Shown in pieces: positions 1 to 45,639 of a stretch of 64,000 bases of DNA; position 1 is the first letter of the stretch, and each line of letters starts with the position of its first letter. This DNA is from Macrostomum lignano (Eukaryota). The stretch lies in NCBI GenBank assembly GCA_002269645.1, contig NIVC01002098.1:28343-92342 (forward strand). The letters run 5' to 3'. The notes under the pieces are model-generated. The model was not told the DNA's origin and made no database searches. It saw nothing but the letters and a program-made list of their open reading frames with translations. The position numbers and the translations under genes were made by a program.

Positions 1-20885
<20,885 letters not shown>

Positions 20886-25352: not shown

Positions 25353-28041
25353 CTGTAAAGGCAACAGTTTCAAGACATGTAAATATACAGGTTAAATAAA
25401 ATTGTTAGAAGTAGGTATAAATAAGCGCAAACCTGTTAGACATAGTGCTCCCTGTTAGACAAGCAATGGGTGCTCATCAACTGGTTTTATAGACGTGCAG
25501 ATCTTTTGCACAATATATGGATTCATAAATTTATTACTGAAATACAAAATTATTAGTAAAAAATAACCCTTATAATTATCAGTTAAACGGGCATTCAGCA
25601 AGTAAATTAACAAAGCACACGGTTAAATAGATTCGCACACATTCACTATTATGAATAATTCCTGATGATAAATGCAAGGCAAGGCTGGAAGCTTTTATAA
25701 AATGCCTGCAGACGAAGCGCAGACGGACACCGCTGCCGTCAGCTGGCAAATAAATGCATCGCTAGCTGCTGCACCCTCTTTCACTAATAGTATCTATACG
25801 CACCGAGCTTTGCATCCCTCTTCCATCGAGGGCAAAAAACGCGAGAGAGGAAAAAAATGGGAGAGTGAACCAACAAGAGGGAGGATGTGACCCAACAGAT
25901 TGCAATGCAAGGGTCGCTACGAAACTCTTCTTCACCCATACAAAGCTCTCTGCATGCATCCTTCACGACTGTTTAGTCTATTTGCATTGGATATAGCTAT
26001 GGCTGAATCGGAACATTATAAATTCTCGTATAGTACGCTTGAAAAATGTATGCATTTTTTGCATGGTATTCGATAATCTTCTGACACGACCCAGCAGCGC
26101 GCTGCAGCCCCGCATACTGTCCCTCGATCCTTCATTATATACATAAATAGCCTTACAGGATAAGAGGCGCTTCTTCGACCCGTCGTACACAGTCCTGCGT
26201 CTGCCTATTACCCGGTAGCTGCTGTATGGCTGGGATGACGGTATACAGCCGCATATTCGAGCAACCGCAGGCCGATCCTGCATGAATAGTTGAAGGATCC
26301 CTGATGAGGAAGAATGACCACTACACAGAGAAATTAGGAGTACTTCGTAATTATCTACTGCAAACAGATCTTTCATCTGCAGCATAATTTGCCTCTAATC
26401 TGCCAATTGAATCTGCATAATAAAAACACGATGAAAAATCGTGCGTGCGTACACATTACATGTACATGGTAGTTGTAAATTCTCTCCGCTTATTTTGACC
26501 CCAACAACAGGGGTCAGACTTTAAGGACACTGAGCTGCAGTCTGCAGCAGCATCCTCTCGATTTTTTGTAAAAATGGCACCACCAAGCCGATCACCGCAT
26601 TCCATACTGCAACTCTGTATATTGGGCGCATTATTGAATACATGTATTTAGTATAATGTTAAGTGCAGCGTTGGGCAAATTTCCAGCACTTCCGGCACTA
26701 ATTAATAGTTACCTTTTTCAAAGTAACAACTTGCCCACACTGGTTAAGTGCGAGCTAGCACTATTTGCTTCAAAGAGCAAAATCTGTTACTCTACAGGTC
26801 ATTTTGGTTTATCTAATCGCGTAGGATGCTTTATACAGTGCATACATGTATGCTTAGCATGCTACTAAACGATTTTCTAATCGTGTCGAATTTTGCAACA
26901 ACTTCTGTATGCTGTATATAATATACCAGACAAAGATACTGTGGATATACAGTATATATTTAATAATTCATGAATAAAAGCTGGAAGAAAAATATAAGCT
27001 GCCAATTAACAGCAAAGAAGAACAAGAAGATTATGCGTTAATATTGATAAGCTGATTTGAAGAAAGAATTAAAGAAAAGAAAGATGGAAAAAAGCCAGAG
27101 TGGGAAAGATCGTAAATTAAGCTTGGAAGAAAAATTCTAATTTTGATAAGCTGATCGAGAGACAGAGGCACCTGCATATATTTTAGAATCTTATGTAGTT
27201 TGAGTGCTTCTTGCATGGGCTGCGTTTAATAAAACAAGAGAAAGGGATAAATAAAAACGCCGTAATATTTTCTGCCGATTGGGAAATAATAATTTTTCCT
27301 AATTGCTGGGCGGGTCTTACTAATCTAATTTTTTCCCAGGGAATACTGAAACAGTGAAACTGCAACACCGCCGACAGAAAGCAGCACTGGCACCACCGAT
27401 GAGGAGCTAAGAAAGTGACCGAATATTGCTGCACGTTTCTTACATAACGTAATTTACGCCATGCCTTTCTTTCGCTGGCATTTTTAAATTGCTTGTTTAA
27501 ATTATTTTTTATTCAAAGAATCGTCGTCGACTTAGTCTGCGTCGGCTGTCGGGCCGTCTGGCGTCTTACTCTTGGCTGGCTTGCGTTGATAGCGCTTGCC
27601 CTTGATCTTTCACTTAGGCCTTCACCTATCTCCTATATATCATGTATGGTGGTTAGATGCTCTTACATGCATAATCATGGACCCTACTGTGTCAAGCACA
27701 AGCAGACCAGACAGCAGCAATTACTAATGATTGTCCCAGGGTTTTTTTTTTGTGCGCAGAGTGTGCGTATGCACCCTAAATTTTAAAATCGCACCCTGAA
27801 ATTAAAAAAGTAGGTGCGGTTTAGGTGCGGTCTTATAACCATTTTTCTTTAAAGGCTTAACCATGCTTAAGCTATTTTTTATGCACTGCCTTAAAATATG
27901 AAACAAAATAACTCTTTAAATCCTATTAAGTCATATAGGCGATATAGCCTATAGCTATAGCCTTATGTAAGATATTAAAATATACATTCCCAGTTGTCAG
28001 AAATGTGAGCAATATGAGGGTTTCACGAGAGATATTCAGAC

Positions 28042-28376
28042 AGGGGCTCCCTAAAACACGCCCCGCACCGGGCCCCAAACCGCTACACATTATAACATTT
28101 TTTGTCAATGCAGTATTTGATTGCAAGGAAAAGTTAAAATAGTAATGGAATAAACATCTTTATTTATTTTTTTAAATATTATTTTTTTATATTCTCGTTT
28201 TCATTATTAATATCACTTATTGTTCACCAAATTTTATATTTCAAAGTAAAAAAACTAAATTTAATAAAAACTTGAAGCTTAACAGAAAACGCATTCTGAA
28301 GTGTCTTTAGTTATAGTCCAATTTGTTTTAATGTGTAGCGCTGCAGGGCGGTGCGGGGCGTGTTTTAGGGAGACCC
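28042..28376. mobile_element. Small MITE (hAT- or P-like) in the Sola2-like left TIR
   Basis: TIR (C)AGGGGCTCCCTAAAACACGCCCCGCACCG / CGGTGCGGGGCGTGTTTTAGGGAGACCC; flanked by ATTCAGAC at 28034-28041 and 28377-28384. Confidence 0.8.
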
Positions 28377-29189
28377 ATTCAGACCACCCGTATATACACG
28401 TTAGGCGGTATAGAACACGGCAAAAACCGCCTATAAGGCAGTCCGTATCATGCTATATGATACAGTAGCATGCTATAGACCGCCTTTTTTATGCGCACAA
28501 GGGCCAAATATGGCACAAATTTGAACAGACGTTTCTGCTTATTTTTTAGTTCACTAATGCAAAGTAGGCCTAGCGATTTTACTAACCTACTACGCTACTA
28601 TTCTCTAGTACAGTATTTTAGTGTCACTAGAATGCTAGATAAATATTAGGTCAGGATGACTTAGTTACAACTTACAAGTGTAAGTGTTAACATTTAACAT
28701 TATTTTATGTAGGCCTACTAAGTACTAGCTGTTTATTATTTCCACAATATTAATAGGCCCAGCGAATTAATATTAGAACAGGAGGAGAACAATACGACTC
28801 GACTTAAAGTTCAATAAGTGAACTTGGATGGCGCTCAGTTTCAGTTTGTAGCTAGGCCTATGCACAATTTTGTAACTGAATGCAATAACTGTGTGACTAA
28901 GCTAGGCCTAGGGCTATATATTCAATATTCTTTTTTCTGAACCCTGAATCCTGAGTTTAGGAGAGAAACTATTTAGTAAAGCTAGCTATATTGATAGATA
29001 TATTGAACAACCATAATTTAGGGTTCTAATATACTATACTAATAGCCTATTATATATATTCCATAAATGGATGTATTTTTTATTTTTTATTTTATTGATA
29101 AATTGGGTTCTATTCTACTATTTTATGTTATAGGTTGAGCCTGAAATTAGTATTTAGTATTTAGAGGTTCTATATTTTTTTTAACCTTC

Positions 29190-31440
29190 CCTTTCCCCAT
29201 AACCTGCTAGCCTTCCCTACATGGTTACACCCTACTGCCCTTGCTTTACCATACCTTACCCTGATGGCCTTCCTACAACACTTGCTACCTTTTCTTATCA
29301 ATACAAGCCTTTCCCATACCTTACTGCCCTTCATTGTCTTTTATGGGCCTTTTCCATACCCTGCTGTCTTTCACAAACCTTGCTGCTCTTCAATGTATCC
29401 TGCTTGGCCTTCATTGTATATTGTTGGCCTTCCCACATGGCCATACCTTGCTGGCTTTTCCCATATCCTGCTAGCCTTCCCCACACCCTACTGTCTTTCC
29501 CCATACCCTGCTGTCTTTCCCCTACCCTGCTGTCCTTCCCCACACCCTTGCCAGCCTTCCTTACTCCTTGCTAGATTTCCCCACACCCTGCCAGCTTCCC
29601 CACACCCTGCCAGCTTCCCCACATCCTGCTCGCCTTCCCTACTCCATGCTACCCTTCCCCACACCCTGCTGTCCTTCCCCACATCCTGCTGGCCTTCCCT
29701 ACTCCCTGCTACCCTTCCCCACACCCTGCTGTCCTTCCCCATCAATGCAGGCCTTCCTCACTCCCTGCTGGCATTCCCCACACCCTGCCGGCCTTCCCCA
29801 CATCCTGCTGGCCTTCCCTACTCCTTGCTACCCTTCCCCACACCCTGCCGGCCTTCCCCACATCCTGCTGGCCTTCCCTACTCCCTGCTACCCTTCCCCA
29901 CACCCTGCTGTCCTTCCCCACACCCTGCTTGTCTTCACTACCAATGCAGGCTTTCCCTACACCCTGCTGTCCTTCCCCATACCCTGCTGTCTTTCCCCTA
30001 CCCTGCTGTCCTTCCCCACACCCTGCCAGCCTTCCTTACTCCTTGCTGGCTTTCCCCACACCCTGCTGGCTTCCTCACATCCTGCTAGACTTCCCCACAC
30101 CCTGCCAGCTTCCCCACATCCTGCTGGCCTTCCCTACTCCTTGCTACCCTTCCCCACACCCTGCCGGCCTTCCGCACACCCTGCTGGCTTTCCTTACTCC
30201 CTGCTACCCTTCCCCACACCCTGCTGTCCTTCCCCACATCCTGCTGGCCTTCCCTACTCCCTGCTACCCTTCCCCACACCCTGCTGTCCTTCCCCATCAA
30301 TGCAGGCCTTCCTCACTCCCTGCTGGCATTCCCCACACCCTGCTGTCCTTCCCCACACCCTGCCTGCCTTCCCTACTGCTGGCCTTCCCTATTTCCTGCT
30401 ACCCTTCCCCACACCCTGCCGGCCTTCCCCACACCCTGCCGGCTTCCCCACACCCTGTCAGCCTTCCCTACTGCTGGCCTTCCCTTTTTCCTGCTACCCT
30501 TCCCCACACCCTGCCGGCCTTCCCCACACCCTGCCGGCTTCCCCACTTCCTGCTGGCCTTCCCTACTCCTTGCTACCCTTCCCCACACCCTGCCGGCTTC
30601 CCCACTTCCTGCTGGACTTCCCTACTCCCTGCTACCCTTCCCCACACCCTGCCAGCCTTCTCTACTGCTGGCCTTCCCTATTTCCTGCTACCCTTCCCCA
30701 CACCCTGCTGTCCTTCCCCATCAATGCAGGCCTTCCTCACTCCCTGCTGGCATTCCCCACACCCTGCCGGCCTTCCCCACACCCTGCCGGCTTCCCCACA
30801 TCCTGCTGACCTTCTCTACTCCCTGCTACCCTTCCCCACACCCTGCCGGCTTCCCCACACCCTGTCAGCCTTCCCTACTGCTGGCCTTCCCTTTTTCCTG
30901 CTACCCTTCCCCACACCCTGCCGGCCTTCCCCACACCCTGCCGGCTTCCCCACTTCCTGCTGGCCTTCCCTACTCCCTGCTACCCTTCCCCACACCCTGC
31001 CGACTTCTCCACATCCTGCCGGCTTCTCCACATCCTGCCGGCCTTCCCTATTTCCTGCTACCCTTCCCCACACCCTGCCGGCCTTCCCCACATCCTGCTC
31101 GCCTTCCCTACTCCCTGCTAACCTTCCCCACACCCTGCTGTCCTTCCCCACATCCTGCTGGCCTTCCCTACTCCCTGCTACCCTTCCCCACACCCTGCTG
31201 TCCTTCCCCATCAATGCAGGCCTTCCTCACTCCCTGCTGGCATTCCCCACACCCTGCCGGCTTCCCCACATCCTGCTGACCTTCTCTACTCCCTGCTACC
31301 CTTCCCCACACCCTGCTGTCCTTCCCCACACCCTGCCTGCCTTCCCTACTGCTGGCCTTCCCTATTTCCTGCTACCCTTCCCCACACCCTGCCGGCCTTC
31401 CCCATACCCTGCTGTCATTTTCCACACCCTGCCACTCTAC
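29190..31440 (+). repeat. C-rich ~20-21-bp minisatellite (CCTTCCCCACACCCTGCTG..) in left foldback arm
   Basis: Tandem units; reverse-complement array at 37320-39300. Confidence 0.95.
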
Positions 31441-31998
31441 CTCTCACAGGCTACCCCTCCCAGACAGCCCTCCCAGACAGCCCTCCCAGACAGCCCTCCC
31501 AGACAGCCCTCCCAGACAGCCCCTCCAGGCTAACCGGACTCTACCCCTCCCAGGCAGCCCTTCCGGGCTTTATCTCCCACTCAACCTCTTCCAGACAGCG
31601 CTCCCAGGCTACCCTTCCTGGCTACTCTTGCCAGGCTACCCCTCTCGGGCTCCTCTCCCACTCTACCCCTCCCAGGCAGCGCTCCCCCTTCCATGGCAAC
31701 CACTTCCAGGCTATCTCCCACTGTGCCCTTGAGTACTGTCTCCATTTATGTTCAAAACTGAGAAGATTGTTTCGTTTCGGTATTATTTAAAAATATAACA
31801 CTATGCATCGTTATTTACTTCAGACGCTTCACTCTTACCATTTCAGGTGCGTACATGCGAGTCAGCTAACGCTGACGCCGCACTTTGTATTCGGCTTTCC
31901 AACGGGGAACTGTGCGTTTATGAAAGCCATTTGGGATTTGGAATGCCAGAAAAGAAATTCTATTTTGCAAGGATCCGATAAATGCTGCCGCTACGGCT

Positions 31999-32345
31999 GC
32001 AGTGACCACTGGCTCAAGCGGAGGACGATCGCAGGACTGTCTGCTGCCTGCCGCTTGCTGCAGTGACCGCCGGCTCAAGCGGAGGACGATCGCAGGACTG
32101 TCTGCTGCCTGCCGCTTGCTGCAGTGACCGCCGGCTCAAGCGGAGGACGATCGCAGGACTGTCTGCTGCCTGCCGCTTGCTGCAGTGACCGCCGGCTCAA
32201 GCGGAGGACGATCGCAGGACTGTCTGCTGCCTGCCGCTTGCTGCAGTGACCGCCGGCTCAAGCGGAGGACGATCGCAGGACTGTCTGCTGCCTGCCGCTT
32301 CGGCTGCAGTGACCGCCGGCTCAAGCGGAGGACGATCGCTGCTCC
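31999..32345 (+). repeat. 61-bp CpG-rich tandem repeat at inner end of left arm (about 6 copies)
   Basis: GCAGTGACCGCCGGCTCAAGCGGAGGACGATCGCAGGACTGTCTGCTGCCTGCCGCTTGCT starting at 31999, 32060, 32121, 32182, 32243, ~32305; inverted copies at 37040-37188. Confidence 0.95.
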
Positions 32346-33239
32346 GCGTGCTATCATCCAGTCCGGTTCCGTTTCGACCTTAACGAACAGTGGCAAAGTG
32401 AGGGTTATTTAATAACTATGTTTATTTCCTGAACGATTGTCTGAAGTGATGCGTGTTCGTGGGACTCACACCCTGGCGATGCGCAGTCCTGTACCAGCGG
32501 TTTGTAGTTGCTGTGTAGCTGAAGTTTTTGCGGGCAGCTCTATGTTGCGCGCATTACTTCAGTTGTTTTTGCGTAGCTGCATAAAGTTTTTCTATCCAAG
32601 CGGCACATTACCTTTGCGTTTATTGAGAGCTATAATTATTTTTTGTCCGAATAACAAATAAAAAAGCTTTTTTCTCGACCGATGTCACCCGGTAATTTGG
32701 CTGTTGCGCCACGCATTTTAGTGCAGTTTTGAAAGGTCAAATCGTCCAAGTAGTTTTCTAATTTTTTCACTTTGTGTTACACTTATTTGAGAAATTTCGT
32801 TCGTGCAAAAGAAATGACCAGACTGCAAGTCGCGGTTTGAATTTCGGATCGCGGCGGCCTGAAAAGTCTCTCATCCTGCTCAGAATGTTAAACTATCCTT
32901 AGCTAATGGCAAACTATCCACATAGTCTGGCTAATTTGCTACCTCAAGTAAGCTAGGCTTAAAAATAGCACCAAAATTGGGTTGCATGAACAAGCTCGCA
33001 CTAGCAAAAGCAAGCACGGCTAGAATGGAGATTAGCACAAGAGCTCAAGTATTTTGGAGCAAGAGCGTATTGACACTGACGCAACTCACGCAAGTATTTC
33101 ACCTACATGTATGTTCAATCATGGATTAGTGCCAGTATGCACACGAGTATGTTTGACCTAGCTGCAGAGGAGATCATCCGGCGGATGCAGCAATCAGGAG
33201 GCGAAGAAGACCGCCCAATTCCGCTAGCCTCTGGCGACC

Positions 33240-33532
33240 ATGAATGACTTCCATCGAAGTGATGTCCCTCCGGGGGCGTCGGTCTCGCTTGCAGCGCGGT
33301 ACCGGGTGAGCATCGATATGCTCTCGGGCCTGCAAGCGTCGGAGAGTTGGGCCGGGGTGAGTGAGTGGTGAAGACCGGGTAGTGGCAGATAAATTGTTCT
33401 GCATTTTTACTGCCTGTTGAGCGGCAGAAAAGCTTGGGGCACCGCGCACGGCTCCTCAAGTACCTGGCCCTGAAGGAAGCGGTGGCGAGAGAAGCAGCCA
33501 TGCATGCCCGGAGAGGGCCCATGTACATGTAA
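33240..33532 (+). CDS. Candidate two-exon small ORF (~73 aa) in foldback spacer
   Basis: ATG 33240, 39 codons to GGG|GTGAGT, acceptor CAG| at 33427, KSLGHRARLLKYLALKEAVAREAAMHARRGPMYM*; no homology recognised. Confidence 0.25.
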
Positions 33533-33561
33533 ATGCTCTTAAGATCCCTGAGGTTGAGCCT

Positions 33562-33699
33562 AAGGAAGGCTTGTGTGTAAACGTAGCCACTTATGTAGTA
33601 AATAGAGGCTTTTTCCTCGGTAGAAATTCGAGCAAGGGATAAACTTACCTGTAGCTCATCAAAACTGACATTCTCTTCAATTTGATGGGTTCGGCCTTT
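33562..33699 (-). pseudogene. Probable remnant of P-element/THAP9-type transposase C-terminal region
   Basis: Minus frame KGRTHQIEENVSFDELQVSLSLARISTEEKASIYYISGYVYTQ; EEKASIYYISGYV (33618-33580) resembles the YIxGYV motif of P transposases (recalled, not searched). Confidence 0.55.
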
Positions 33700-35024
33700 C
33701 TAAGCCTATATAGCTTCGGGCCTCAGAATTCGGAAATGAATCACTTAGAACTCTGGCCTCTCACTCCTGTCAGATGGTCAGCCCCATGGTAGCCAGATTG
33801 TGGGCGAGCAGCAAGGTCCTATAGCTAGGAGAAGACAGCGAGAGACAAGCAGGGAGAATTTGAAAGGTAGAGATTAGCTAATCCGCAGATTAACTAACCC
33901 GCTGCCACCAGTCCGTGCGCCCCGGCTCACCAAACCGGAGCTATCGAAATCGGACTTCCGACTAGAGGGGCACTGCACTTACCTGCCATCTAGTCTTTTA
34001 GCTGTCTAAATCTCGAAGTCATAGCCGAATAGAACGGACGCTGCTGGGACTAAGATCGCATTGGCCATGCAGGGACAGAGGACTTTTGCAGGGGGTTCTT
34101 GCACTGGCGAGCCTTTATACACTACCAAATGTACTATTTCATTACCAAATTCCCAGAAGTACATGTATAAGTACACGTAACTGCACGCTTTTGGAACTAA
34201 ATGTGCGTTAACACGTCGACAGATAGCGATGATGTAGATGTATTGTCACTTTTGGAGACCTTCAGACTAATATTTATCTCGTTTTAGCCGCTTAGCTGCC
34301 TGAGACAGTGCGAAAGCGCCAGTCTGGCACTTAATTTGCATGCTTAACATAATGATTTCTTAGATCGACTGATTGACTGGGAACTGTGCCGCTTCCGGTC
34401 CACTGTGACCTCTGCCTCTAGATTTAGCTGCTCATCTCAGCTGGCGTTGCGAAAAATAAAGAAAACGCCAAGTCTTTAACTTCCAGATTTAACTTTCTCA
34501 CTTAATCCGCAATCCTAAACACTTTAGATTGAGTTAGAGCAAATGGCTACTTTTAATATTAACTAACACTTCTGCCTCGAGATTGGCACACAAAAGCAAG
34601 TAAGCAAAAGTGCAAATCCTATCAGACTACCTAGGAAGGGGTTAGACAAAGGGTGCACCCAGTTAAGCAGGTCAAAAGAGCCTCTCACCCAACTAATCGG
34701 AGGACCTATCTGCCGGTAGCCAAGGAATCCACAGAGACCGAAACACTCAGATGGTATGCTGCTGCTGATCTTAACTGACGCGCGACGCTGTTGCTCCTCA
34801 CTTGCCGGTTGTCGTTGCTACTCTTAGATCACTGCCGGGAGATATTGATGATGCTTCTCAGGGGGAACTTAGCTTTTGAAGACGAAACTGCCGGGGGAAG
34901 GAGGATCAGATCGGCAGGACCGTAGGGGGAAGAGCCAGAAGGCAGTATCAGGCCAAGTTGAGCGCCCCAGGCCTTGGCAAGGACAAAAACCGGGAGATAT
35001 TTCGAGCGCAGTTAGAGTTGCCGC

Positions 35025-35081
35025 CTTTTATAGCTCTCACGCGGCCGATTTGTTATAACGCACGCTGAATTTTCCGATTGG
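35025..35081 (-). promoter_or_regulatory. Pol II promoter-like CCAAT plus TATA box in foldback spacer
   Basis: Minus strand CCAAT (35081-35077) followed about 45 nt later by TATAAAAG (35032-35025), pointing toward the transposase remnant. Confidence 0.45.
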
Positions 35082-35139
35082 CTGAGAGCTTTTGTTAAAA
35101 CTCCGCCGAACGACGAAAACGCCAAAAACTGCTGCACGA

Positions 35140-35420
35140 TCCTTCACAAGACCGAAACTTCATAAGACCGAAATTTCACAACGCCGAAACACCATACTTC
35201 ACAAGACCGAAACTTCATAAGTTCAAACTTCGTTACTACAAATAAAAGTATTTCGTGGTAACGACGAGGCAGCAAAAAAGGCAGCAAGTTCGCAAGTCTT
35301 GTGAAGGGCCCAGTATTTTAAGCTTTGGGGTTGTGAAACTTCGGTCTTATGAAGTTTCTGTCTTGTGAAGTGCCCTGCATTTTGAGCTTTCGGCGTTGTG
35401 AAATTTCGGTCTTATGAACC
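35140..35420. mobile_element. Small MITE-like inverted-repeat element in foldback spacer
   Basis: Repeated CACAAGACCGAAACTTCATAAGACCGAAATTTCACAACGCCGAAA with inverted copies at 35330-35418; TSD not resolved. Confidence 0.6.
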
Positions 35421-37319
35421 CCCCCCCCATGTAGCTAGTGCATGTGCACTTGCCAAGCACGTCACAGAGAAGGCAAAACTTTTCCCGATATATTGTGCTT
35501 CTCAAATCAAATACTCGTACGTATTTAAATTAATAACATGCAATCCGTGTTTCCCGTTCGTTATTTTCAGCAGTACAGCATTTTTGCACCCCCTCATAAT
35601 AGGTGCCCCTCATTACTCATGTTGGCCTCCTAAACTTGGACCGCCCCCTCCCAAAATGAAATTCTAGATCCGCCACTGCTCGTATATGATAAGACTGACT
35701 GAATTTACTATTACTAATATACCTATACTAGTTATAAATCATGTCTCAATCCGATGGAAACAACTTACGTATGTAAATGTCCATGTACCAGGAAAGTCAT
35801 GGCTATTTAAAAAGTGGCAGGATGTCAGGCTATGAGAGCACGAGACTTTTCCACAGAGGCTTTTCTTGCCGAGCTTTCCTCTAATTTTTAACCAACAGGT
35901 GCTGCAGAGACAGAGGGCGAGAAGGAGAAAGGGAGGCCAATAGGGGCAGATAAACTATTGAGACTACTGTAATGTAAAATCATACCTCTCGTAAAATCAT
36001 GTAAAATCATGTAAAATCACTTTATACCTCTCGCCATATGGCTCTACCTCCCACTATTCTTTGTGACCATATTTGTGTCATCATCAAAAGAGAATTCGAT
36101 AAAATAGGAATGTTTCAGGACATGACAGAGCGAATTATCGTAAAAAGCATAGTTAAAAGCAGTGAAGTCTGTTTTATTTTAGAGGCACATGTTTACAATA
36201 CTCAGTTAAGTATATACATGTACTCGTAAAACTGCACATTGACAAAAGACAATGAAAAACTCTTGTCGAAAAAATGCGCTGCATAGTTCTCTCAAACTCG
36301 ACAAGGGGGGGACAAAAAACTGGTTACAGCATTACAGAGCGAGAAAAAGAGCGTCAGCGTTTGATGGTAGTGCAATATTGCAAAGAAGTCACGGATTAAA
36401 TGTTCTATACGCCACGGGCACAGAGAAGTGTGACCAAACATTTATACGGCTACGTCGGCTAACAGCTAATTTCTGTCCAATGTGGCTGAATAGTCATACA
36501 TGTCGTAGTCGTCACCGTCGTCTTCTTTCACCTCAGAGGATCCTGCGTGCACTCTGCGTCCTATGAATAGGCAGCAGCATAATGCACATTGCTTTGTCTC
36601 ATCTCGATACCTGCCAATGAACGAGAGAAAAAGTCCTTGTATTTAAAATGCAAATGCATGATGCAAAGCATTCCAATACAGTTCATAGCTAATCTGCATT
36701 GTTAGCACTTGATGCTGGAGTGACTATGAGCGGAGAAGCTGAATAGGTTCTGTAAGCGACCAACACAATTCACTGATTTCACTAGGAAGAAGCTAAATAC
36801 ATGCCATCTTACCATCTACGTACTCTTGTTTCAAACGACCTCATTTAACGTATTCTGCTGATGATATTGTAGAGTGTATAAGCGGCAGCATATAATAGTC
36901 GTCTTTTTTTCCTCACTGCTAATTAAACGAGAAGATAAATAACTGGCATAGATCTCCTCTAAAAGAAATCGGATAATATGCTTCTTCATTAGTCCTTCGA
37001 TCGCCCTTAGCACTCACAACACTAGTAGATGATAGCACGCGGAGCAGCGATCGTCCTCCGCTTGAGCCGGCGGTCACTGCAGCCGAAGCGGCAGGCAGCA
37101 GACAGTCCTGCGATCGTCCTCCGCTTGAGCCGGCGGTCACTGCAGCTGAAGCGGCAGGCAGCAAACAGTCCTGCGATCGTCCTCCGCTTCTGGAAGAGGT
37201 TGAGTGGGAGATGAAGCCCGGAAGGGCTGCCTGGGAGGGGTAGAGTCGGGTTAGCCTGGAGGGGCTGTCTAGGAGGGCTGTCTGGGAGGGCTGTCTGGGA
37301 GGGGTAGCCTGTGAGAGGT

Positions 37320-39300
37320 AGAGTGGCAGGGTATGGGAAATGACAGCAGGGTATGGGGAAGGCCGGCAGGGTGTGGGGAAGGGTAGCAGGAAATAGGGAA
37401 GGCCAGCAGTAGGGAAGGCAGGCAGGGTGTGGGGAAGGACAGCAGGGTGTGGGGAAGGGTAGCAGGAAATAGGGAAGGCCAGCAGTAGAGAAGGCTGGCA
37501 GGGTGTGGGGAAGGGTAGCAGGGAGTAGGGAAGGCTAGCAGGATGAGGGGAAGCAGGCAGGGTGTGGGGAAGGCCAGCAGGGTGTGGGGAAGGCCGGCAG
37601 GGTGTGGGGAAGGGTAGCAGGAAATAGGGAAGGCCAGCAGTAGGGAAGGCTGGCAGGGTGTGGGGAAGGACAGCAGGGTGTGGGGAAGGGTAGCAGGGAG
37701 TAGGGAAGGCCAGCAGGAAGTGGGGAAGCCGGCAGGGGGTGGGGAAGGCCGGCAGGGTGTGGGGAAGGGTAGCAGGATGTGGGGAAGGCCGGCAGGGTGT
37801 AGGGAATGCCAGAAGGGAGTGGGAAAGGCCTGCATTGATGGGGAAGGACAGCAAGGTGTAGGGAAAGCCTGCATTGGTAGTGAAGATTAGCAGGGTGTGG
37901 GGAAGGACAGCAGGGTGTGAGGAAGGACAGCAGGGTGTGGGGAAGGGTAGCAAGGAGTAGGGAAGGCCAGCAGGAAGTGGGGAAGCCGGCAGGGTGTGGG
38001 GAAGGCCGGCAGGGTGTGGGGAAGGGTAGCAAGGAGTAGGGAAGGCCAGCAGGATGTGGGGAAGGCCGGCAGGGTGTGGGGAATGCCAGCAGGGAGTGAG
38101 GAAGGCCTGCATTGATGGGGAAGGACAGCAGGGTGTAGGGAAAGCCTGCATTGGTAGTGTAAGACAAGCAGGGTGTGGGGAAGGACAGCAGGGTGTGGGG
38201 AAGGGTAGCAGGGAGTAAGGAAAGCCAGCAGGGTGTGGGGAAGGCCGGCAGGGTGTGGGGAAGGGTAGCAGGGAGTAAGGAAAGCCAGCAGGGTGTGGGG
38301 AAGGCCGGCAGGGTGTGGGGAAGGGTAGCAAGGAGTAGGGAAGGCCAGCAGGATGTGGGGAAGCTGGCAGGGTGTGGGGAAGTCTAGCAGGATGTGAGGA
38401 AGCCAGCAGGGTGTGGGGAAAGCCAGCAAGGAGTAAGGAAGGCTGGCAGGGTGTGGGGAAGGACAGCAGGGTAGGGGAAAGACAGCAGGGTATGGGGAAA
38501 GACAGCAGGGTATGGGGAAGGACAGCAGGGTGTAGGGAAAGCCTGCATTGGTAGTGAAGACAAGCAGGGTGTGGGGAAGGACAGCAGGGTGTGGGGAAGG
38601 GTAGCAGGGAGTAGGGAAGGCCAGCAGGATGTGGGGAAGGCCGGCAGGGTGTGGGGAAGGGTAGCAAGGAGTAGGGAAGGCCAGCAGGATGTGGGGAAGG
38701 CCGGCAGGGTGTGGGGAATGCCAGCAGGAAGTGAGGAAGGCCTGCATTGATGGGGAAGGACAGCAGGGTGTGGGGAAGGGTAGCAGGGAGTAGGGAAGGC
38801 CAGCAGGATGTGGGGAAGGACAGCAGGGTGTGGGGAAGGGTAGCATGGAGTAGGGAAGGCGAGCAGGATGTGGGGAAGCTGGCAGGGTGTGGGGAAGCTG
38901 GCAGGGTGTGGGGAAATCTAGCAAGGAGTAAGGAAGGCTGGCAAGGGTGTGGGGAAGGACAGCAGGGTAGGGGAAAGACAGCAGGGTATGGGGAAAGACA
39001 GTAGGGTGTGGGGAAGGCTAGCAGGATATGGGAAAAGCCAGCAAGGTATGGCCATGTGGGAAGGCCAACAATATACAATGAAGGCCAAGCAGGATACATT
39101 GAAGAGCAGCAAGGTTTGTGAAAGACAGCAGGGTATGGAAAAGGCCCATAAAAGACAATGAAGGGCAGTAAGGTATGGGAAAGGCTTGTATTGATAAGAA
39201 AAGGTAGCAAGTGTTGTAGGAAGGCCATCAGGGTAAGGTATGGTAAAGCAAGGGCAGTAGGGTGTAACCATGTAGGGAAGGCTAGCAGGTTATGGGGAAA
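37320..39300 (-). repeat. Inverted copy of the C-rich minisatellite in right foldback arm
   Basis: CAGCAGGGTGTGGGGAAGG units; outer part near-identical to the left arm. Confidence 0.95.
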
Positions 39301-40531
39301 GGGAAGGTTAAAAAAAATATAGAACCTCTAAATACTAAATACTAATTTCAGGCTCAACCTATAACATAAAATAGTAGAATAGAACCCAATTTATCAATAA
39401 AATAAAAAATAAAAAATACATCCATTTATGGAATATATATAATAGGCTATTAGTATAGTATATTAGAACCCTAAATTATGGTTGTTCAATATATCTATCA
39501 ATATAGCTAGCTTTACTAAATAGTTTCTCTCCTAAACTCAGGATTCAGGGTTCAGAAAAAAGAATATTGAATATATAGCCCTAGGCCTAGCTTAGTCACA
39601 CAGTTATTGCATTCAGTTACAAAATTGTGCATAGGCCTAGCTACAAACTGAAACTGAGCGCCATCCAAGTTCACTTATTGAACTTTAAGTCGAGTCGTAT
39701 TGTTCTCCTCCTGTTCTAATATTAATTCGCTGGGCCTATTAATATTGTGGAAATAATAAACAGCTAGTACTTAGTAGGCCTACATAAAATAATGTTAAAT
39801 GTTAACACTTACACTTGTAACTAAGTCATCCTGACCTAATATTTATCTAGCATTCTAGTGACACTAAAATACTGTACTAGAGAATAGTAGCGTAGTAGGT
39901 TAGTAAAATCGCTAGGCCTACTTTGCATTAGTGAACTAAAAAATAAGCAGAAACGTCTGTTCAAATTTGTGCCATATTTGGCCCTTGTGCGCATAAAAAA
40001 GGCGGTCTATAGCATGCTACTGTATCATATAGCATGATACGGACTGCCTTATAGGCGGTTTTTGCCGTGTTCTATACCGCCTAACGTGTATATACGGCTG
40101 TTCAGACAGACATTCAAAACGACCGTCTGTAACTTCAAACAAAATTGACCCGTTTCAACCATCTTTTTGGCAAATACTTACGCAAGTGTTGGGCGTCAAA
40201 TAAGCTTTAATTTATTAACTGAAGTAAAAATCCTTCTGACATACATTGATTTAAAAATTGCTTAGCAACACTAGCTCTGATTAGAAATCGCTTTACTGTT
40301 GACTAAAATTGTTTTGATCGTAGCAGCCTAAAAGCAGATACTGGATTTAAAAATGCTTCGATTTACTCTATACGCATGTCTCAGCTTTAAAATGACACCT
40401 CAGGTGTTGCAAAAGACAGCTTTGATGCTGAGATATTCGACACTAAACATTGCTTTGCTCAAACTCACATTCGGAAACTTCACTGATTTTTATTCAATAT
40501 TTGTTCAGATGCTTGTCTACTTCTCCATTTA

Positions 40532-40980
40532 TTAACCATCGCATGGAGCCTTGCTAACGTACAAGTGTATGTAGTTACTGTAAATGGGGGGTTTTGTGAC
40601 TCACTTAAACTTGTTTACGCATTCTGCAGCTATTTGCCGCCTTTCATTGGAGTGATTCATGGAGTCCAGTTGATAAATTTCCGCAAATTGGACTGCTTCT
40701 ACGTCAGATCTCAACATTTGGAACCATCCTTGAACTATTTCAGAGTTAAGTGAGCTAATGGCATCAAATGGAAGGCTAGTGCTCATACTCGTAAGCAAAG
40801 CAGGTTCACAATTGAAATGGTTGTATTCATGGCCATCGGATCTAAACTGATCTGTTTTACTTTCACGATTGCTTCGGTCTCAGAAGGAGCAGCAGTTGAT
40901 GGACTGAGGTGAGAAGAAGATGTGTCACGACTTGAGCTGTTTTTAGAAAATATCTTTATCCAATTAAATATTTTCATGCG
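40532..40980 (-). other. Spliced coding remnant inside the Sola2-like element (unknown protein)
   Basis: Overlapping frames MKIFNWIKIF.. and ..EIVQGWFQMLRSDVEAVQFAEIYQLD..KF; 51-nt GTGAGT..TTAG intron at 40604-40554 gives N|KAPCDG*; junction between the two frames unresolved. Confidence 0.3.
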
Positions 40981-42814
40981 GCTCCTTAGGTTGTTCCGAA
41001 TTCCGAGTCTAGAAGTCAAGACAGAAAAAAAGTTAAGAACTGCTACGGTAGTCCGTAGGGATTGGAAAGCTTAGCAGTACATTAGAAATCGCCTGTTCAA
41101 TCTAAAAAGTTTGAAGTACATATAGCTATTGGGTTGCAACAACAGTAGAAAATTTTTTTCCTTTTTATTTTATTCCCACCGCTTACCTCATTCCAATTTG
41201 GATAGCAGAATTGCCACGCAAAAAAAGTAAAAACATAACAATAAACTATTTGCTTCATATTAATTGCCACTGACTGTTAATAAACGCGACGTCAATTTCT
41301 CTCAATAACAATTGGAACATGTTTCTTGTACACTCGTATATTTATTTGAATTGCAAAGCGGTGAAAAAGTCATGATTGGTCGCCATATGTACAAATGTAC
41401 ACTCACAGACTCACTGACTCAGGTACAATCTATGCAATATAAAGGCAGGAATCATTAAAAATCAAATACTTAAGACAGTTTAAGAGAAGTCCAGGTTTAA
41501 ACTGGACATGACTAGAATTTGACAAGTTTCTGATGAAAAACAAGGACATGGCAGCTGCACAAATATCGATAAAAATCAGTGAAATTTCTGAATGTGAGTT
41601 TGCACAAAGCAATTGTTTAGTGTCGAATATCTCAGCATCAAAGCTGTCTTTTGCGACGCCTGAGGTGTCATTTTAAAGCTGAGACATGCGTATAGAGTAA
41701 ATCGAAGCATTTTTAAATCCAGTATCTGCTTTTAGGCTGCTACGATCAAAACAATTTTAGTCAACAGTAAAGCGATTTCTAATCAGAGCTAGTGTTGCTA
41801 AGCAATTTTTAAATCAATGTATGTCAGAAGGATTTTTACTTCAGTTAATAAATTAAAGCTTATTCGACACCCAACACTTGCGTAAGTATTTGCCAAAAAG
41901 ATGGTTGAAGCGGGTCAATTTTGTTTAAAGTTACAGACGATCGTTTCGAATGTCTGTCTGAATATCTCTCGTGAAACCCTCACATTCTAAACAAGACTCA
42001 AGAGAAATTGCACTCTGAGCCTTAAAATCGCACCTTGAAATTTGGCACAAGGTGCGATTTCGCACCTTATCTCTGGCGAAAAAAAAAACCCAGGATTGTC
42101 CATTGGGCTGGGTATTGGCATTGGGTTGCTAAAGTAAATTGCCAATAACAATACTTTCACTATAATGAAAATTATATAACTAGAATATTTACTATATATA
42201 GGTAGGCATATTATATAATTGCATAAGGCATATTTTAAATTAAAAGTAGGTTAACAAGAATTTTGTTTTGTTATAACTTTCTTGACTGAAACAACTTGTA
42301 CTTGAGTTTTTAGCCTACCCAACACTTTTACACATATCCTATTACTAAAAATGGTTTGTATCTATTTATAGGGCCTATAGACTATCTATCTAACTTTTAG
42401 TTTCTAGGCCTAACTAGTAGGCCCTTAACTAATCCTAATCCTATATACTAAAAATGAAAATCTTGCTTGCTTGTAATTTAGATAAGATATGGCTCAAGCT
42501 TAACTAGTAGGCCTAATTTTCTTCAAAATTGCACCATTCAATTAATTAGAAACTTTTCCATGATGGTACATGTTTCTTGGCTAAGAAATTGCACAATGCT
42601 AAGGGGTTCAAAATTAAAAAGTCTTTTTGAAAAGGTCAAATAGACTTTTTGACTTTAAAATGCATTGTAAAAAATGCTAAAAAACTAACTAGCTAAATTC
42701 TGATTGCATCATACTAGGCTTCTATAGTCTATTTCATGCTTAAAGTTATGCCAGAAGAAAACTAATACAATTTTATCATTTACTTATACCAGACTTATGC
42801 CATGCTTATGTACC

Positions 42815-44193
42815 GGTCACCAATAACTTTGGCGATAGTTCACTTCGGTGACAGTCACTTTGGTGACAAGTCACTTCGGCAACAATTAATAACAGCTAAA
42901 GAATGCATTTATAATATATGTATTTTTTGCCAATGAAATTTCATGATTAAAAAAGCAACACAAATTTATATTTAGGTATATTTAGGTATTTAGCTAGGTA
43001 TATTTATTCTCCTACATGCGCAACTGCTAGCTGACCTGGCCGATCTGGCCACTGTAAATTGTGGTAGACTAGGGGTAAGTTGCAAAAATGCCCAGCCTAA
43101 AGAATACAGATGTAGTATTAATTAGATGACGAGACATTTAGCCCTTATTTATAAGACAGTCATAGTTACTCCTGCCATTTACCCAAAATTGCATTAGGGT
43201 TTCTTTCACAAGTAAGTCACATTTTTGGTCAAAAAGTAAGTCGCATGGCCAGTGTAAATCAGGAGGGGTTGTGCATGTATGTTTATTCTCAATTTAATAA
43301 GTAGAAGGTGGGGTTAACACAAGCTCTAGCGGGTTGTAAATATGCATGCATTACTATGTACTTGTACATTAACTGTACGTTAACACAATGTATTTGCCAC
43401 AAGAGATCTCAGTCTACAAAAAAGCCACTTGAACTAATAACAACATTGAGGGCTTTCACAACCGCTTGAACAGTCGGGCTCAATGTGGTCAGCTCCAGTT
43501 CTACCTCCTGGTTAAGCTGCTATACGACAAGGGCCACATAGTCTCTATCGATTTGCAATTGGTGTCACAAGGTGCTCTGAGGTGGTTGCAGCAAAAGAAG
43601 TACTGCCAGTGACAGTCCAAATACTTCAAACTTTGGTTGGAGTATCAAGCTGGAGACTGATCAATTCAGTCACTTCTAGAGGCTTGCAGCAAGCTGAATG
43701 GACCGTAAACTGTCTATGGTGCACCTGCATATGCTTAACTTCTGTAATGCTAAGACTTCTTTGCATGCTACATGTAGCATCTCTGCTTTTAATGCTTTTA
43801 ATGCATGTTTATTTCTCTTTCTTTATTTCTGCAATGGAGTGACACAGTGTATGTGCCCATACATCCCAATATGCCAAATAAATTTATAACAATACTTACA
43901 GTACTATATAATGCAAGTCAATTCATTTTGTACTTTATCATATTTATTGTAAGTTGGCGCCTCTCAATGTCTTTTAGACATGGCGCATCTCAATGTCTTT
44001 TAGACATGGCGGTTTATAACAAAATACTGAAAATTTGTGTTTCTTTTTTAATCCAGATAAATCACACTTTTTAATTGTGAAGTTTCATTGGCAAAAAAGA
44101 TGTCTTTTAGCTGTTAATTGTTGCCAAAGTGATCCAAATGTGTTGCCAAAATGACTGTTGCTGAAGTGACTTGTCACCAAAGTGATTGTAATT
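42815..44193 (+). mobile_element. Decayed Mutator (MULE) element
   Basis: Degenerate TIRs (42815-~42965 vs ~44035-44193) with CACTTCGG/CCAAAGTG subrepeats; 9-bp TSD TTATGTACC / CTATGTACC. Confidence 0.75.
43409..43708 (+). pseudogene. MULE transposase C-terminal remnant with in-frame stops
   Basis: SVYKKAT*TNNNIEGFHNRLNSRAQCGQLQFYLLVKLLY...FKLWLEYQAGD*SIQSLLEACSKLNGP*; RTNNxxEGxH motif of invertebrate MULE transposases. Confidence 0.85.
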
Positions 44194-45329
44194 CTATGTA
44201 CCACATGCCAGGCATAATGCCTAGACTAAGGGAAGGTATAGGGCAGTTTGTTTAAACATTTTCATTACAAAAATTAAAAATATAATACACAAATGTTTCT
44301 ATTTGTATATTATATTAAAACTTTATAAATATATAGGTATAAAAAAGAAAATAATGTAAAAAAAAATTGTATTATAACATAATTTCTAAATTTTAAACTT
44401 TGTTTTACTTTTTACAAAATATATAGTTTAAATTCTCTATTTTATTCAAATACAGAATAAGTTAACACAGTGGTTGAAATCACAGTCATATTTATTTCTA
44501 ATCAGGTTAAATACACCAAATGATCATATTGTAATTGTTTTTATACTAGCCATTTATGCCTATCTATTTTTTATCAATTTTATTTCCAAGCATTTATGCC
44601 AAGGCTTTTTTTTGTAAAATTACACTAGATATTTTGGCATAACAGTAATAAAACAGACCATGGCTAAGCTTTTTATTTATTGACTTTTGTCAGTTTACAA
44701 TTGATTGGCCTAATGTGAATCCAACTTGAATTGTATTACTATAAAACAGAGTTTGGTAGCATAGGCCCTAGAATAAGATTGCATTTACAAATTAGACTTG
44801 ATTTGCATTCTATAATAGTCATATATGCCCAACCTTAAAATTTCACCCATCTAATGCAACTTACTTTTGTCTAGATTTGTGATTTAGTTTCTCCCGATTA
44901 TGACTTAGTTGCCCCGATTGCGACTTAATTTTCACTTTGTATATGATTTTTCTTGCCTTTTTTCTTTTTTCTCTTTTTCTTTTTCTTTCCTCTTCTCTTC
45001 TCTCTTTTTCCCTCCTTTCTTTTCCCTTTCTCTTCCTCTCCCTTCTTTCTTCCCAATTTTTTGTTTTTTGCATTTTCAATTTTGTGACTTACCTTGGTTG
45101 GTGGCCATTTCACCCATCTGGTTTGGATGGGTTAGACAGGTATTAGGCATATATGATAACAGTATATCTATAATTGTATATTAAATTATTACAAGCTATT
45201 TTGAATAAAATTTAATAATAATTTGTAATGTAGCTCCCAATAAATCAGCCCTATTGGAATAAATGTTAAAAACCCGCAGACGCGCGCTTTAGAAAAGAGT
45301 CAAACTATTTTACCGCACTTTAGGATTAT

Positions 45330-45639
45330 TAGAGATGTTCCAAAAGATCTGCAGTTTCATCGAAATCAAAATTCGCTAACTTTCCAAAATCAAAATTGAA
45401 ATTTCCCGAAATCATAATTCAGAAAAACAAAGTTTAGTATGATCAACACTCACTTTTTTACTTTCAATTTACTGCTTAAGCAAAAAGTAATACATGTATA
45501 TGTAGTAGAAAGTAGTTTATTTTTAGCAACTTTTTAGACACTACCAAAATTTTACTTCTAAATTTTATTTCGAAATTGAAATTCGCTCTAAAAAATTTCA
45601 AATTTTGGAAAATTGAAATTGAATTTTCGGAACATCTCT
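45330..45639. mobile_element. hAT-like MITE (TAGAGATGTTCC TIR), possibly nested in a CpG-rich element at ~45264-45825
   Basis: TAGAGATGTTCC at 45330 and GGAACATCTCTA ending 45639; TSD poorly conserved. Confidence 0.5.

What the first reader, a model, noticed from the sequence alone, without database searches (positions are those of the whole stretch)
28385..40100. Giant Galileo-like foldback transposon with 3-4 kb minisatellite-filled arms
Seen: 28385-32358 (~3.97 kb) and 37028-40100 (~3.07 kb) are inverted copies around a 4.67-kb spacer, with CA...TG termini and a 7-bp direct repeat TTCAGAC on both sides. Each arm holds a C-rich ~21-bp array and a 61-bp array. Known: Drosophila Galileo is a P-superfamily foldback element with long TIRs containing tandem repeats and 7-bp TSDs. 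Inference: this is a Galileo-type family in a non-dipteran, probably flatworm, genome with unusually long arms. The YISGYV remnant in the spacer supports the P-superfamily assignment.
Basis: partly seen in the sequence, partly recalled or inferred. Interest (0 to 1): 0.85.

Follow-up and report, generated by a model that had tools for sequence, protein, structure and literature searches.

The report
Nested foldback transposon in a flatworm
This is a real 11.7-kb non-coding "foldback" jumping gene in the flatworm Macrostomum lignano, sitting inside another mobile element that is missing from a duplicated copy of the same region; it is a new example of a known kind, and its assignment to the P-element/Galileo family is plausible but unproven.

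Summary
Window 28385-32358 and 37028-40100 are inverted copies around a 4.67-kb middle. The ends read CA...TG and TTCAGAC flanks both sides. Each arm holds a 786-bp unique end, a 20-bp (not 21-bp) C-rich array of about 2 kb, a 13-bp array and a 61-bp array.

The host is Macrostomum lignano (Mlig_3_7, contig NIVC01002098.1).

- It lies in one arm of a 440-bp internal inverted repeat of a larger element, X (27737-42093).
- The other arm of that repeat keeps the uninterrupted target, a single TTCAGAC. This proves insertion with a 7-bp duplication.
- A 336-bp MITE sits at the same target.
- All 14,357 bp of X are absent from a duplicated contig (NIVC01002670.1). The empty site there is clean, and X has an 8-bp duplication (GATTGTCC) and CAGGG ends, a hAT-like signature.

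No coding capacity was found in the middle by six-frame Pfam, a 5.8-billion-protein search or a phmmer search of 1.84 billion representatives. The YISGYV "remnant" is unsupported: the motif arises in 7% of shuffles.

The element is a non-autonomous foldback-type cut-and-paste transposon. P-superfamily membership rests only on the 7-bp duplication. No other copies could be retrieved. Interest is modest.

The parts
27729..27736 (.). Left copy of the 8-bp target-site duplication GATTGTCC of the outer element X
   Evidence: It is single-copy in the duplicate contig (L004 2173-2180).
27737..42093 (+). Outer element X, 14,357 bp including its nested inserts and about 2.3 kb without them. Ends are CAGGGTTTTTTTTTT...AAAAAAAAAACCCAG. 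It is absent from the duplicated contig NIVC01002670.1.
   Evidence: L004 1-2180 matches window 25559-27736, and L004 2173-4486 matches window 42094-44417.
42094..42101 (.). Right copy of the 8-bp duplication GATTGTCC of X
28011..28041 (+). Outer 31 bp of the left arm of X's internal inverted repeat. It ends in TTCAGAC copy 1 (28035-28041), and the arm continues at 40108-40512.
28042..28377 (.). 336-bp MITE with terminal inverted repeats of about 55 bp (AGGGGCTCCCTAAAACACGCCCCGCACCG). It is inserted at the same TTCAGAC target, and its duplication can be read as 7 or 8 bp (ATTCAGAC).
28378..28384 (.). TTCAGAC, left target-site duplication of the foldback element
28385..29170 (+). Left arm, unique AT-rich terminal (flanking) domain, 33.7% GC. 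The terminus is CACCCGTATATACACG. The motif AGGCGG/ACCGCC occurs three times in the first 130 bp.
29171..31432 (+). Left arm: degenerate units at 29171-29440, then the 20-bp C-rich minisatellite at 29441-31432 (101.6 copies, with a 59-60-bp higher-order period).
31455..32358 (+). Left arm, inner domain: 13-bp array (31455-31522), 27-bp array, a 604-bp segment found only in this arm (31595-32198), and the 61-bp array (31996-32339, 5.6 copies). The repeat ends at 32358.
32359..37027 (.). Middle domain, 4,669 bp, 44.8% GC, with no detectable coding capacity. It contains a small palindrome built of 16-bp units at 35135-35418.
33118..33699 (-). 194-aa open frame containing YISGYV. It is not supported as a transposase remnant.
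37028..40100 (-). Right arm: 61-bp array (37047-37189, 2.3 copies), 13-bp array (37262-37303), 20-bp array (37326-39051, 87.6 copies) and unique terminal domain (about 39322-40100). The terminus is ...CGTGTATATACGGCTG.
40101..40107 (.). TTCAGAC, right target-site duplication of the foldback element
40108..40512 (+). Remainder of the left arm of X's internal inverted repeat
   Evidence: (I2).
41551..41986 (-). Right arm of X's internal inverted repeat (96% identical to the left arm). It carries the uninterrupted target, a single GTCTGAA at 41956-41962.

Best explanation
Window 28385-40100 is a non-autonomous foldback-type class II (cut-and-paste, terminal-inverted-repeat) transposon of Macrostomum lignano.

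Architecture. It has the modular layout described for foldback elements: a unique terminal domain, tandem-repeat domains, an inner domain, and a non-coding middle domain.

Insertion. It inserted with a 7-bp staggered cut at TTCAGAC, about 30 bp inside one arm of the internal inverted repeat of a hAT-like non-autonomous element, X (27737-42093). X has an 8-bp duplication and CAGGG ends. A 336-bp MITE occupies the same target. The whole nest is an insertion relative to a duplicated copy of the region.

What is shown: the anatomy, the duplication, both empty sites and the lack of coding capacity.

What is inferred:
- It is mobilised in trans by a DDE transposase that recognises the CA(C/G)CCGTATATACACG termini and subterminal AGGCGG(T) motifs.
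- The arms grew to 3-4 kb by minisatellite amplification. The arrays change by slippage or unequal exchange, while the unique parts stay about 99.9% alike because the element is young or the arms convert each other.
- The composite probably arrived at this locus as one 14.4-kb unit moved by X's ends.

The superfamily of the foldback element is unresolved. P is the best guess (about 0.4-0.5) because 7 bp is that superfamily's characteristic duplication length.
For: - Inverted arms with E = 0; their unique parts are 99-100% identical.
- Exact 7-bp direct repeat at the boundaries.
- Joining 28011-28041 to 40108-40512 restores collinearity with the reverse complement of 41551-41986, which holds one TTCAGAC.
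- Window 27737-42093 is absent from contig NIVC01002670.1, whose flanks are 98-99% identical and which holds a single GATTGTCC.
- The terminal 816 bp occurs only at the two outer ends, so the arms are not themselves complete elements.
- There is no ORF over 137 aa and no Pfam, 5.8-billion or 1.84-billion protein hit in the middle domain.
- The subterminal region holds short inverted motifs and folds better than shuffles, z = -2.66.
- Published foldback architecture, and the use of TSD length for classification when no transposase is found.
Against: - Only one copy could be examined. Copy number, TSD consistency and an autonomous partner are untested because the host genome could not be searched by DNA.
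- One TSD of 7 bp could be an aberrant event of a family that normally makes 8-bp duplications.
- The near-identity of the arms could be inflated by consensus polishing of a PacBio assembly.
- Whether the foldback element entered X before or after X reached this locus is not resolved.
Confidence: 0.8

Rival explanations
1. One reading: a Galileo-type member of the P superfamily, mobilised by a THAP-plus-P-type transposase, with a decayed transposase (YISGYV) in the middle domain.
For: - The 7-bp duplication and CA...TG ends.
- Long inverted repeats with internal tandem repeats, as in Galileo.
- TNNGGCA, a THAP1-type core recalled from my own knowledge, occurs twice in the first 150 bp; 2% of shuffles reach that count.
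- From general knowledge of TSD lengths, P is the main superfamily with 7-bp duplications.
Against: - No trace of a transposase: six-frame Pfam found nothing, the 5.8-billion-protein search found nothing, and phmmer of the YISGYV frame against 1.84 billion representatives returned 0 hits.
- The motif class arises in 7% of shuffles.
- Foldback architecture is convergent, and most foldback elements are Mutator-related.
- Only one duplication is available.
- Sequence similarity to Galileo or P ends could not be tested.
Confidence: 0.4
2. A foldback element of another superfamily (hAT, Mutator or an undescribed one), whose single observed duplication happens to be 7 bp.
For: - Most foldback elements are placed in Mutator.
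- The neighbourhood is full of elements with 8-bp duplications: X, the 591-bp MITE and possibly the 336-bp MITE.
- hAT duplications of 5-8 bp are on record (own knowledge).
Against: - Against the uninterrupted target, 7 bp is the exact reading. An 8-bp reading needs an A-to-G change at one specific base.
- The ends show no significant similarity to X or to either MITE.
Confidence: 0.3
3. A composite: two inverted copies of a 3-4-kb repeat-bearing element that captured 4.67 kb of host DNA and moved together by their outer ends.
For: The middle domain has no relation to the arms and no coding capacity.
Against: - The inner ends of the arms do not resemble the outer termini.
- The terminal 816 bp occurs only at the two outer ends, so each arm is not a complete element.
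- No duplications flank the individual arms.
Confidence: 0.08
4. An assembly fold-back artefact (a palindromic chimeric long read), or a non-transpositional inverted duplication.
For: - Mlig_3_7 is a PacBio/Canu assembly of a very repetitive genome.
- 1,327 bp of the arms are 100% identical.
Against: - A 4.67-kb unique middle and arms of unequal length with a 604-bp one-sided segment.
- Precise ends with a 7-bp duplication and an intact target in the sister arm.
- The structure lies 56 kb inside a 204-kb contig, within an element that itself has clean ends and an empty site.
Confidence: 0.03

Closest known systems
Galileo (Drosophila buzzatii / mojavensis; P superfamily)
   Same: - 7-bp target-site duplication.
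- Long terminal inverted repeats that contain tandem repeats and differ in length between the two ends.
- Many non-autonomous copies.
- Tandem repeats proposed to act as secondary transposase-binding sites.
   Different: - Galileo repeats reach about 1.26 kb with 136-210-bp units; here the arms are 3.1-4.0 kb with 13-, 20- and 61-bp units.
- No P-type transposase or remnant was found here.
- The host is a flatworm.
- Sequence similarity of the ends was not testable.
Drosophila FB (foldback) elements and Tetris of D. virilis (assigned to Mutator)
   Same: - The same modular layout: terminal domain, tandem-repeat domain, inner domain and a non-coding middle.
- Multi-kb arms made mostly of short tandem repeats, with the two arms unequal.
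- No transposase of their own.
   Different: Their duplications are 8-10 bp (9 bp for FB, from my own knowledge). Here the duplication is 7 bp.
hAT-type non-autonomous elements (Ac/Ds-like ends CAGGG..., 8-bp duplication)
   Same: - The outer element X has an 8-bp duplication and CAGGG/CTGGG ends.
- X has subterminal GGTGCG/CGCACC motifs in both orientations.
   Different: - This applies to X, not to the foldback element, whose duplication is 7 bp.
- GATTGTCC does not fit the weak nTnnnnAn hAT target consensus (own knowledge).
- No transposase is present.

Membership tests
Foldback-type TIR transposons (structural class) | Very long terminal inverted repeats built of a terminal domain, tandem repeats and an inner domain | tested here: met
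Foldback-type TIR transposons (structural class) | Flanking target-site duplication showing insertion | tested here: met
   TTCAGAC lies on both sides, and the sister arm holds the intact target.
Foldback-type TIR transposons (structural class) | Middle domain without coding capacity (non-autonomous copy) | tested here: met
Foldback-type TIR transposons (structural class) | Multiple dispersed copies sharing the termini | not testable with these tools
   - There is no DNA search of the host genome.
- No second copy occurs in the window or in about 60 kb of related loci.
- The metagenome scan was empty.
- The protein-handle search with the arm ORF was empty.
P superfamily / Galileo | P-type transposase (THAP, RNase-H-like catalytic domain with GTP-binding insertion) or a recognisable remnant | tested here: not met
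   No hit in any frame, and YISGYV is compatible with chance. A non-autonomous copy need not carry one, so this lowers membership but does not exclude it.
P superfamily / Galileo | 7-8-bp target-site duplication | tested here: met
   7 bp, from one insertion.
P superfamily / Galileo | Terminal sequence related to Galileo/P ends; THAP-binding sites near the ends and in the repeats | tested here: inconclusive
   - No reference ends were available.
- TNNGGCA occurs twice in the first 150 bp; 2% of shuffles reach that count.
- No 8- or 9-mer of the terminal 300 bp recurs in the 20-bp array. One 7-mer does (CAGGATG, 13 times as its reverse complement).
- GACCGCC recurs in the 61-bp array (5 times).
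Mutator-type foldback elements (FB, Tetris, Tm1) | 8-10-bp target-site duplication | tested here: not met
   7 bp; the family values are.
hAT (for the foldback element) | 8-bp target-site duplication | tested here: not met
   An 8-bp reading needs a mismatch at 40100 against the intact target.
hAT (for the outer element X) | 8-bp duplication and CAGGG-type short terminal inverted repeats | tested here: met
   GATTGTCC on both sides; CAGGGTTTTTTTTTT / CTGGGTTTTTTTTTT ends; empty site in L004. Transposase: none present.

The most novel reading that the evidence does not exclude
This would be the first P-superfamily (Galileo-like) foldback family outside insects, with arms about three times longer than any Galileo. 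Alternatively, or in addition, foldback-type elements like this one carry and seed a share of the minisatellite arrays that make up about 13% of the M. lignano genome. Two smaller foldbacks with tandem-repeat arms lie in the same 64 kb. Such elements could also contribute to the species' known karyotype instability through ectopic recombination.
Probability: 0.2. Interest if true: 0.55.

Novelty: new member of a known kind. Interest (0 to 1): 0.3.

Why it matters
- M. lignano is the only flatworm with stable transgenesis, and its genome is hard to assemble because of tandem repeats and transposons.
- This locus shows recent DNA-transposon activity. A 14.4-kb nested insertion and a 591-bp MITE differ between duplicated copies that are 98-99% identical.
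- It gives a concrete foldback family whose termini can be used to find the autonomous partner.
- If that partner is active, it bears on transgene stability, on tool building, and on how minisatellites and rearrangements arise in this genome.
- As a transposon finding it is otherwise ordinary.

Tried and rejected
1. Transposase remnant. Pfam on all six frames of 32340-37040, 40 stop-free stretches joined and searched against 5.8 billion proteins, and phmmer of the YISGYV frame against 1.84 billion representatives all came back empty.

2. Other copies through protein handles. The 769-aa frame of the arm is not on record and has no homologues.

3. The plexin first exon as a handle to the left flank in duplicated contigs gave no hits.

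4. An exact 26-mer of the terminus found nothing in JGI metagenome contigs.

5. A third copy of the region (NIVC01003084.1, L005) could not be followed to the insertion site.

6. MFS paralogue P0004 lies in a non-syntenic locus.

7. A shared subterminal motif between the foldback element and the 336-bp MITE (AACACG-N7-ACCGCC) is not significant: 11-16% of shuffles do as well.

8. The idea that the 20-bp unit derives from the terminal domain found little support. Between the terminal 300 bp and the 20-bp array, no 8- or 9-mer recurs, and only the 7-mer CAGGATG does (13 times as its reverse complement).

9. Rfam found no RNA family in the window, so a Dada-type small-RNA-gene target is unlikely.

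10. The idea of a larger outer inverted repeat beyond 28011/41986 was rejected. Only the 15-bp X termini match there.
Full report
**1. The observation**

- The repeat finder gives a 1,327-nt arm pair at 100% complementarity (28672-29998 against 38494-39820) and a terminal pair running to 28379/40106.
- A global alignment shows that the outer 1.78 kb of the arms differ by two substitutions (28387 C/G, 29763), one 7-bp indel and one 20-bp unit indel.
- The inner ends also match: 31400-31594 against 37358-37190 (97%) and 32199-32358 against 37189-37028 (99%). A 604-bp stretch (31595-32198) is present only in the left arm.
- The arms are 3,974 and 3,073 bp and the middle is 4,669 bp.
- The termini are CACCCGTATATACACG... 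and ...CGTGTATATACGGCTG. TTCAGAC lies at 28378-28384 and 40101-40107.
- Each arm runs in this order: a 786-bp AT-rich unique domain (33.7% GC); degenerate units; a 20-bp C-rich array (CCACACCCTGCTGGCCTTCC; 101.6 and 87.6 copies; 62% GC); a 13-bp array; and a 61-bp array of 5.6 and 2.3 copies.

**2. Host and setting**

The MFS-transporter ORF at 55370-57409 (minus strand) is encoded on NIVC01002098.1 of GCA_002269645.1. The record position equals the window position plus 28,342. Members of its protein cluster are named "[Macrostomum lignano]". NIVC01 is the Mlig_3_7 assembly, built from PacBio data with Canu. The authors report 13% tandem repeats, 3% DNA transposons and 180 Mb of duplicated blocks at 95% identity or more.

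The element lies between two genes:
- a plexin gene on the minus strand (Plexin_cytopl at 2375-2842, PSI repeats at 7.6-9.7 kb);
- an HMG-box gene at 50548-52587.

About 26% of the window is tandem arrays (summed).

**3.

Immediately right of the element starts a 412-bp inverted repeat, 40101-40512 against 41551-41962, at 96% identity. The match continues on the far left side of the element, 28011-28043 against 41986-41954.

Reading the sequence:
- The left arm reads ...GAGATA TTCAGAC [336-bp MITE, 28042-28377] TTCAGAC [foldback element, 28385-40100] TTCAGAC AGACATTC...
- The reverse complement of the right arm reads ...GAGATA TTCAGAC AGACATTC..., with one copy of the heptamer (41956-41962).
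- Joining 28011-28041 to 40108-40512 restores a collinear alignment with the right arm (the one-base gap in that printout came from my joining at 28040).

This is an internal "empty site". It shows that the foldback element, and the MITE, inserted into a pre-existing sequence and that each added one copy of TTCAGAC. For the foldback element, 7 bp is the exact reading. An 8-bp reading would need a base change at 40100.

**4. A second, independent empty site**

Through the protein cluster of the MFS gene I reached a duplicated copy of the region on contig NIVC01002670.1.
- BLASTN shows L004 1-2180 matches window 25559-27736 (99.1%), and L004 2173-4486 matches window 42094-44417 (97.8%).
- Window 27737-42093 (14,357 bp) is therefore absent from that contig.
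- The junctions are clean. L004 reads ...CTAAT GATTGTCC ATTGGGC... The window reads ...CTAAT GATTGTCC | CAGGGTTTTTTTTTTGTGCGC ... GGCGAAAAAAAAAACCCAG | GATTGTCC ATTGGGC....

So an outer element X has an 8-bp duplication, CAGGG/CTGGG ends and subterminal GGTGCG/CGCACC motifs. That is a hAT-like signature. X contains the 440-bp internal inverted repeat, the MITE and the foldback element.
- Without its passengers X is about 2.3 kb.
- No duplication flanks the internal repeat, so I treat that repeat as part of X.
- X's internal arms differ by 4% and the MITE's ends by 15%, while the two contigs differ by only 1-2%.
- On that basis it is more economical that the nest formed elsewhere and arrived here as one 14.4-kb unit. 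Three successive local insertions cannot be excluded.

A third copy of the region (NIVC01003084.1) shares the 591-bp MITE with the window. That contig ends about 3.4 kb beyond the fetched stretch, near the window equivalent of 42.2 kb, which is at X's right end. This would fit an assembly break at X or the foldback element in that copy, but it is only an inference.

**5. Coding capacity**

The middle domain has no ORF above 137 aa.
- Pfam found nothing in any of the six frames at E <= 1.
- Forty stop-free stretches (2,547 aa), joined into one query, found nothing at E <= 0.01 among 5.8 billion proteins.
- The 194-aa frame that contains YISGYV (33118-33699, minus strand) found nothing at E <= 0.001 among 1.84 billion representatives with full HMMER.
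- The pattern Y[IVL][SAG]G[YWF] occurs at least once in 7% of shuffles of the spacer.

The "remnant" is therefore not evidence for a P transposase. This copy is non-autonomous.

**6. What it is and how it works**

- The precise ends, the duplication, two kinds of empty site, the non-coding middle, and the modular arms (terminal domain, tandem repeats, inner domain) match the published description of foldback elements.
- The terminal 816 bp occurs only at the two outer ends. The arms are therefore not complete elements in their own right, which argues against a composite of two elements.
- An assembly fold-back is excluded by the unique middle, the unequal arms, the one-sided 604-bp segment and the duplications.

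The mechanism is inferred:
- A trans-acting DDE transposase binds the ends and probably the AGGCGG(T)/ACCGCC motifs, which occur three times in the first 130 bp of each arm. That region is more structured than shuffles, z = -2.66.
- The enzyme excises the element and integrates it with a 7-bp stagger.
- GACCGCC recurs five times in the left arm's 61-bp array. This could serve as a secondary binding site, as shown for Galileo's repeats, but the support is weak.
- The arrays evolve by slippage or unequal exchange. The unique parts stay about 99.9% alike because the element is young, or because of intra-element conversion.

**7. Family**

Published work states that the foldback shape arises independently in several superfamilies. 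Most foldback elements are placed in Mutator, and Galileo (P superfamily) is an exception.
- Galileo has 7-bp duplications and repeats up to about 1.26 kb with internal tandem repeats.
- This element shares the 7-bp duplication and the architecture, but no transposase evidence exists.
- Mutator-type foldbacks (8-10 bp) and hAT (8 bp) fail the duplication test on this single insertion.
- From general knowledge of duplication lengths, P is the most likely superfamily. I put that at 0.4-0.5, not higher, because there is only one insertion to judge from.
- A THAP1-type core (TNNGGCA) occurs twice in the first 150 bp, and 2% of shuffles reach that count. The motif is short and recalled from memory, so this carries little weight.

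**8. Same-target double insertion**

The MITE and the foldback element sit at the same heptamer. Their ends are not significantly alike. The coincidence remains unexplained. It could reflect a target preference or a shared enzyme.

**9. Verdict**

This is a real and well-delimited nested transposon locus, and a new foldback family in a flatworm. It is a new member of a known kind. The literature searches found no paper that links foldback elements with M. lignano. Interest is modest. The main value lies in the evidence for recent DNA-transposon activity in M. lignano and in a possible link between foldback elements and its minisatellite load.

Noticed in passing
window 28035-28041, 28378-28384, 40101-40107 (intact target 41956-41962): Two different elements, the 336-bp MITE and the 11.7-kb foldback, are inserted at exactly the same TTCAGAC target, giving three tandem copies of the heptamer. 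Their ends are not significantly similar. The cause is unexplained; target preference or a shared enzyme are possibilities.
   Followed up: partly
window 45249-45839 (duplication TAAATCAG at 45241-45248 and 45840-45847): A 591-bp MITE (ends CCCTATTGGAA...TTCCTATAGGG, 8-bp duplication) is absent from the duplicated contig NIVC01002670.1, which shows a clean empty site at L004 about 5150. At least part of it is present in the third copy, NIVC01003084.1. This is a second insertion polymorphism between the duplicated regions.
   Followed up: partly
window 46497-47186: A small foldback-like structure: 100-bp arms made of 24-bp tandem units (GCAATAATCCTTGGCTTATCAAGT) in inverted orientation around about 490 bp, 88% identical. 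Ends and duplication were not determined.
   Followed up: no
window 35135-35418 (inside the middle domain): A palindrome of about 290 bp whose arms are arrays of a 16-bp unit (CTTCACAAGACCGAAA / TTCGGTCTTATGAAGT). It looks like another miniature foldback.
   Followed up: no
window 44418-44564; L004 6958-7083: Further indels between the duplicated contigs: 147 bp extra in the window, and about 125 bp extra in NIVC01002670.1 opposite window 47647-47651. Their nature was not determined.
   Followed up: no
window 1-21080 (minus strand): A plexin gene: Plexin_cytopl at 2375-2842, PSI repeats at 7599-9727, and a signal-peptide-bearing first exon in 19872-21080. Its introns are packed with minisatellites of 20-40 bp. 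About 26% of the whole window is tandem arrays. The first exon matched no protein in the 5.8-billion collection, so it seems to be missing from the deposited gene models.
   Followed up: partly
window 50545-52587 (+), 55370-57409 (-); L003, L004, L005: The HMG-box, MFS-transporter and SNF-transporter gene trio is present on three contigs of the assembly (NIVC01002098.1, NIVC01002670.1, NIVC01003084.1) at 95-99% identity, consistent with the known duplications of the DV1 line. The deposited HMG coding sequence starts one codon after the ATG at 50545.
   Followed up: partly
L005 2525-6541: In the third copy, a Ty3/gypsy-type pol ORF (1,338 aa; RVT_1, RNase H, integrase) sits inside the range of the SNF gene, where the window has no counterpart (window 61896-61958). 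This is an LTR-retrotransposon insertion polymorphism.
   Followed up: no
NIVC01003084.1, record positions 1-3362 (not fetched): The third contig ends at roughly the window equivalent of 42.2 kb, the position of the right end of element X. This would fit an assembly break at X or the foldback element in that copy.
   Followed up: no
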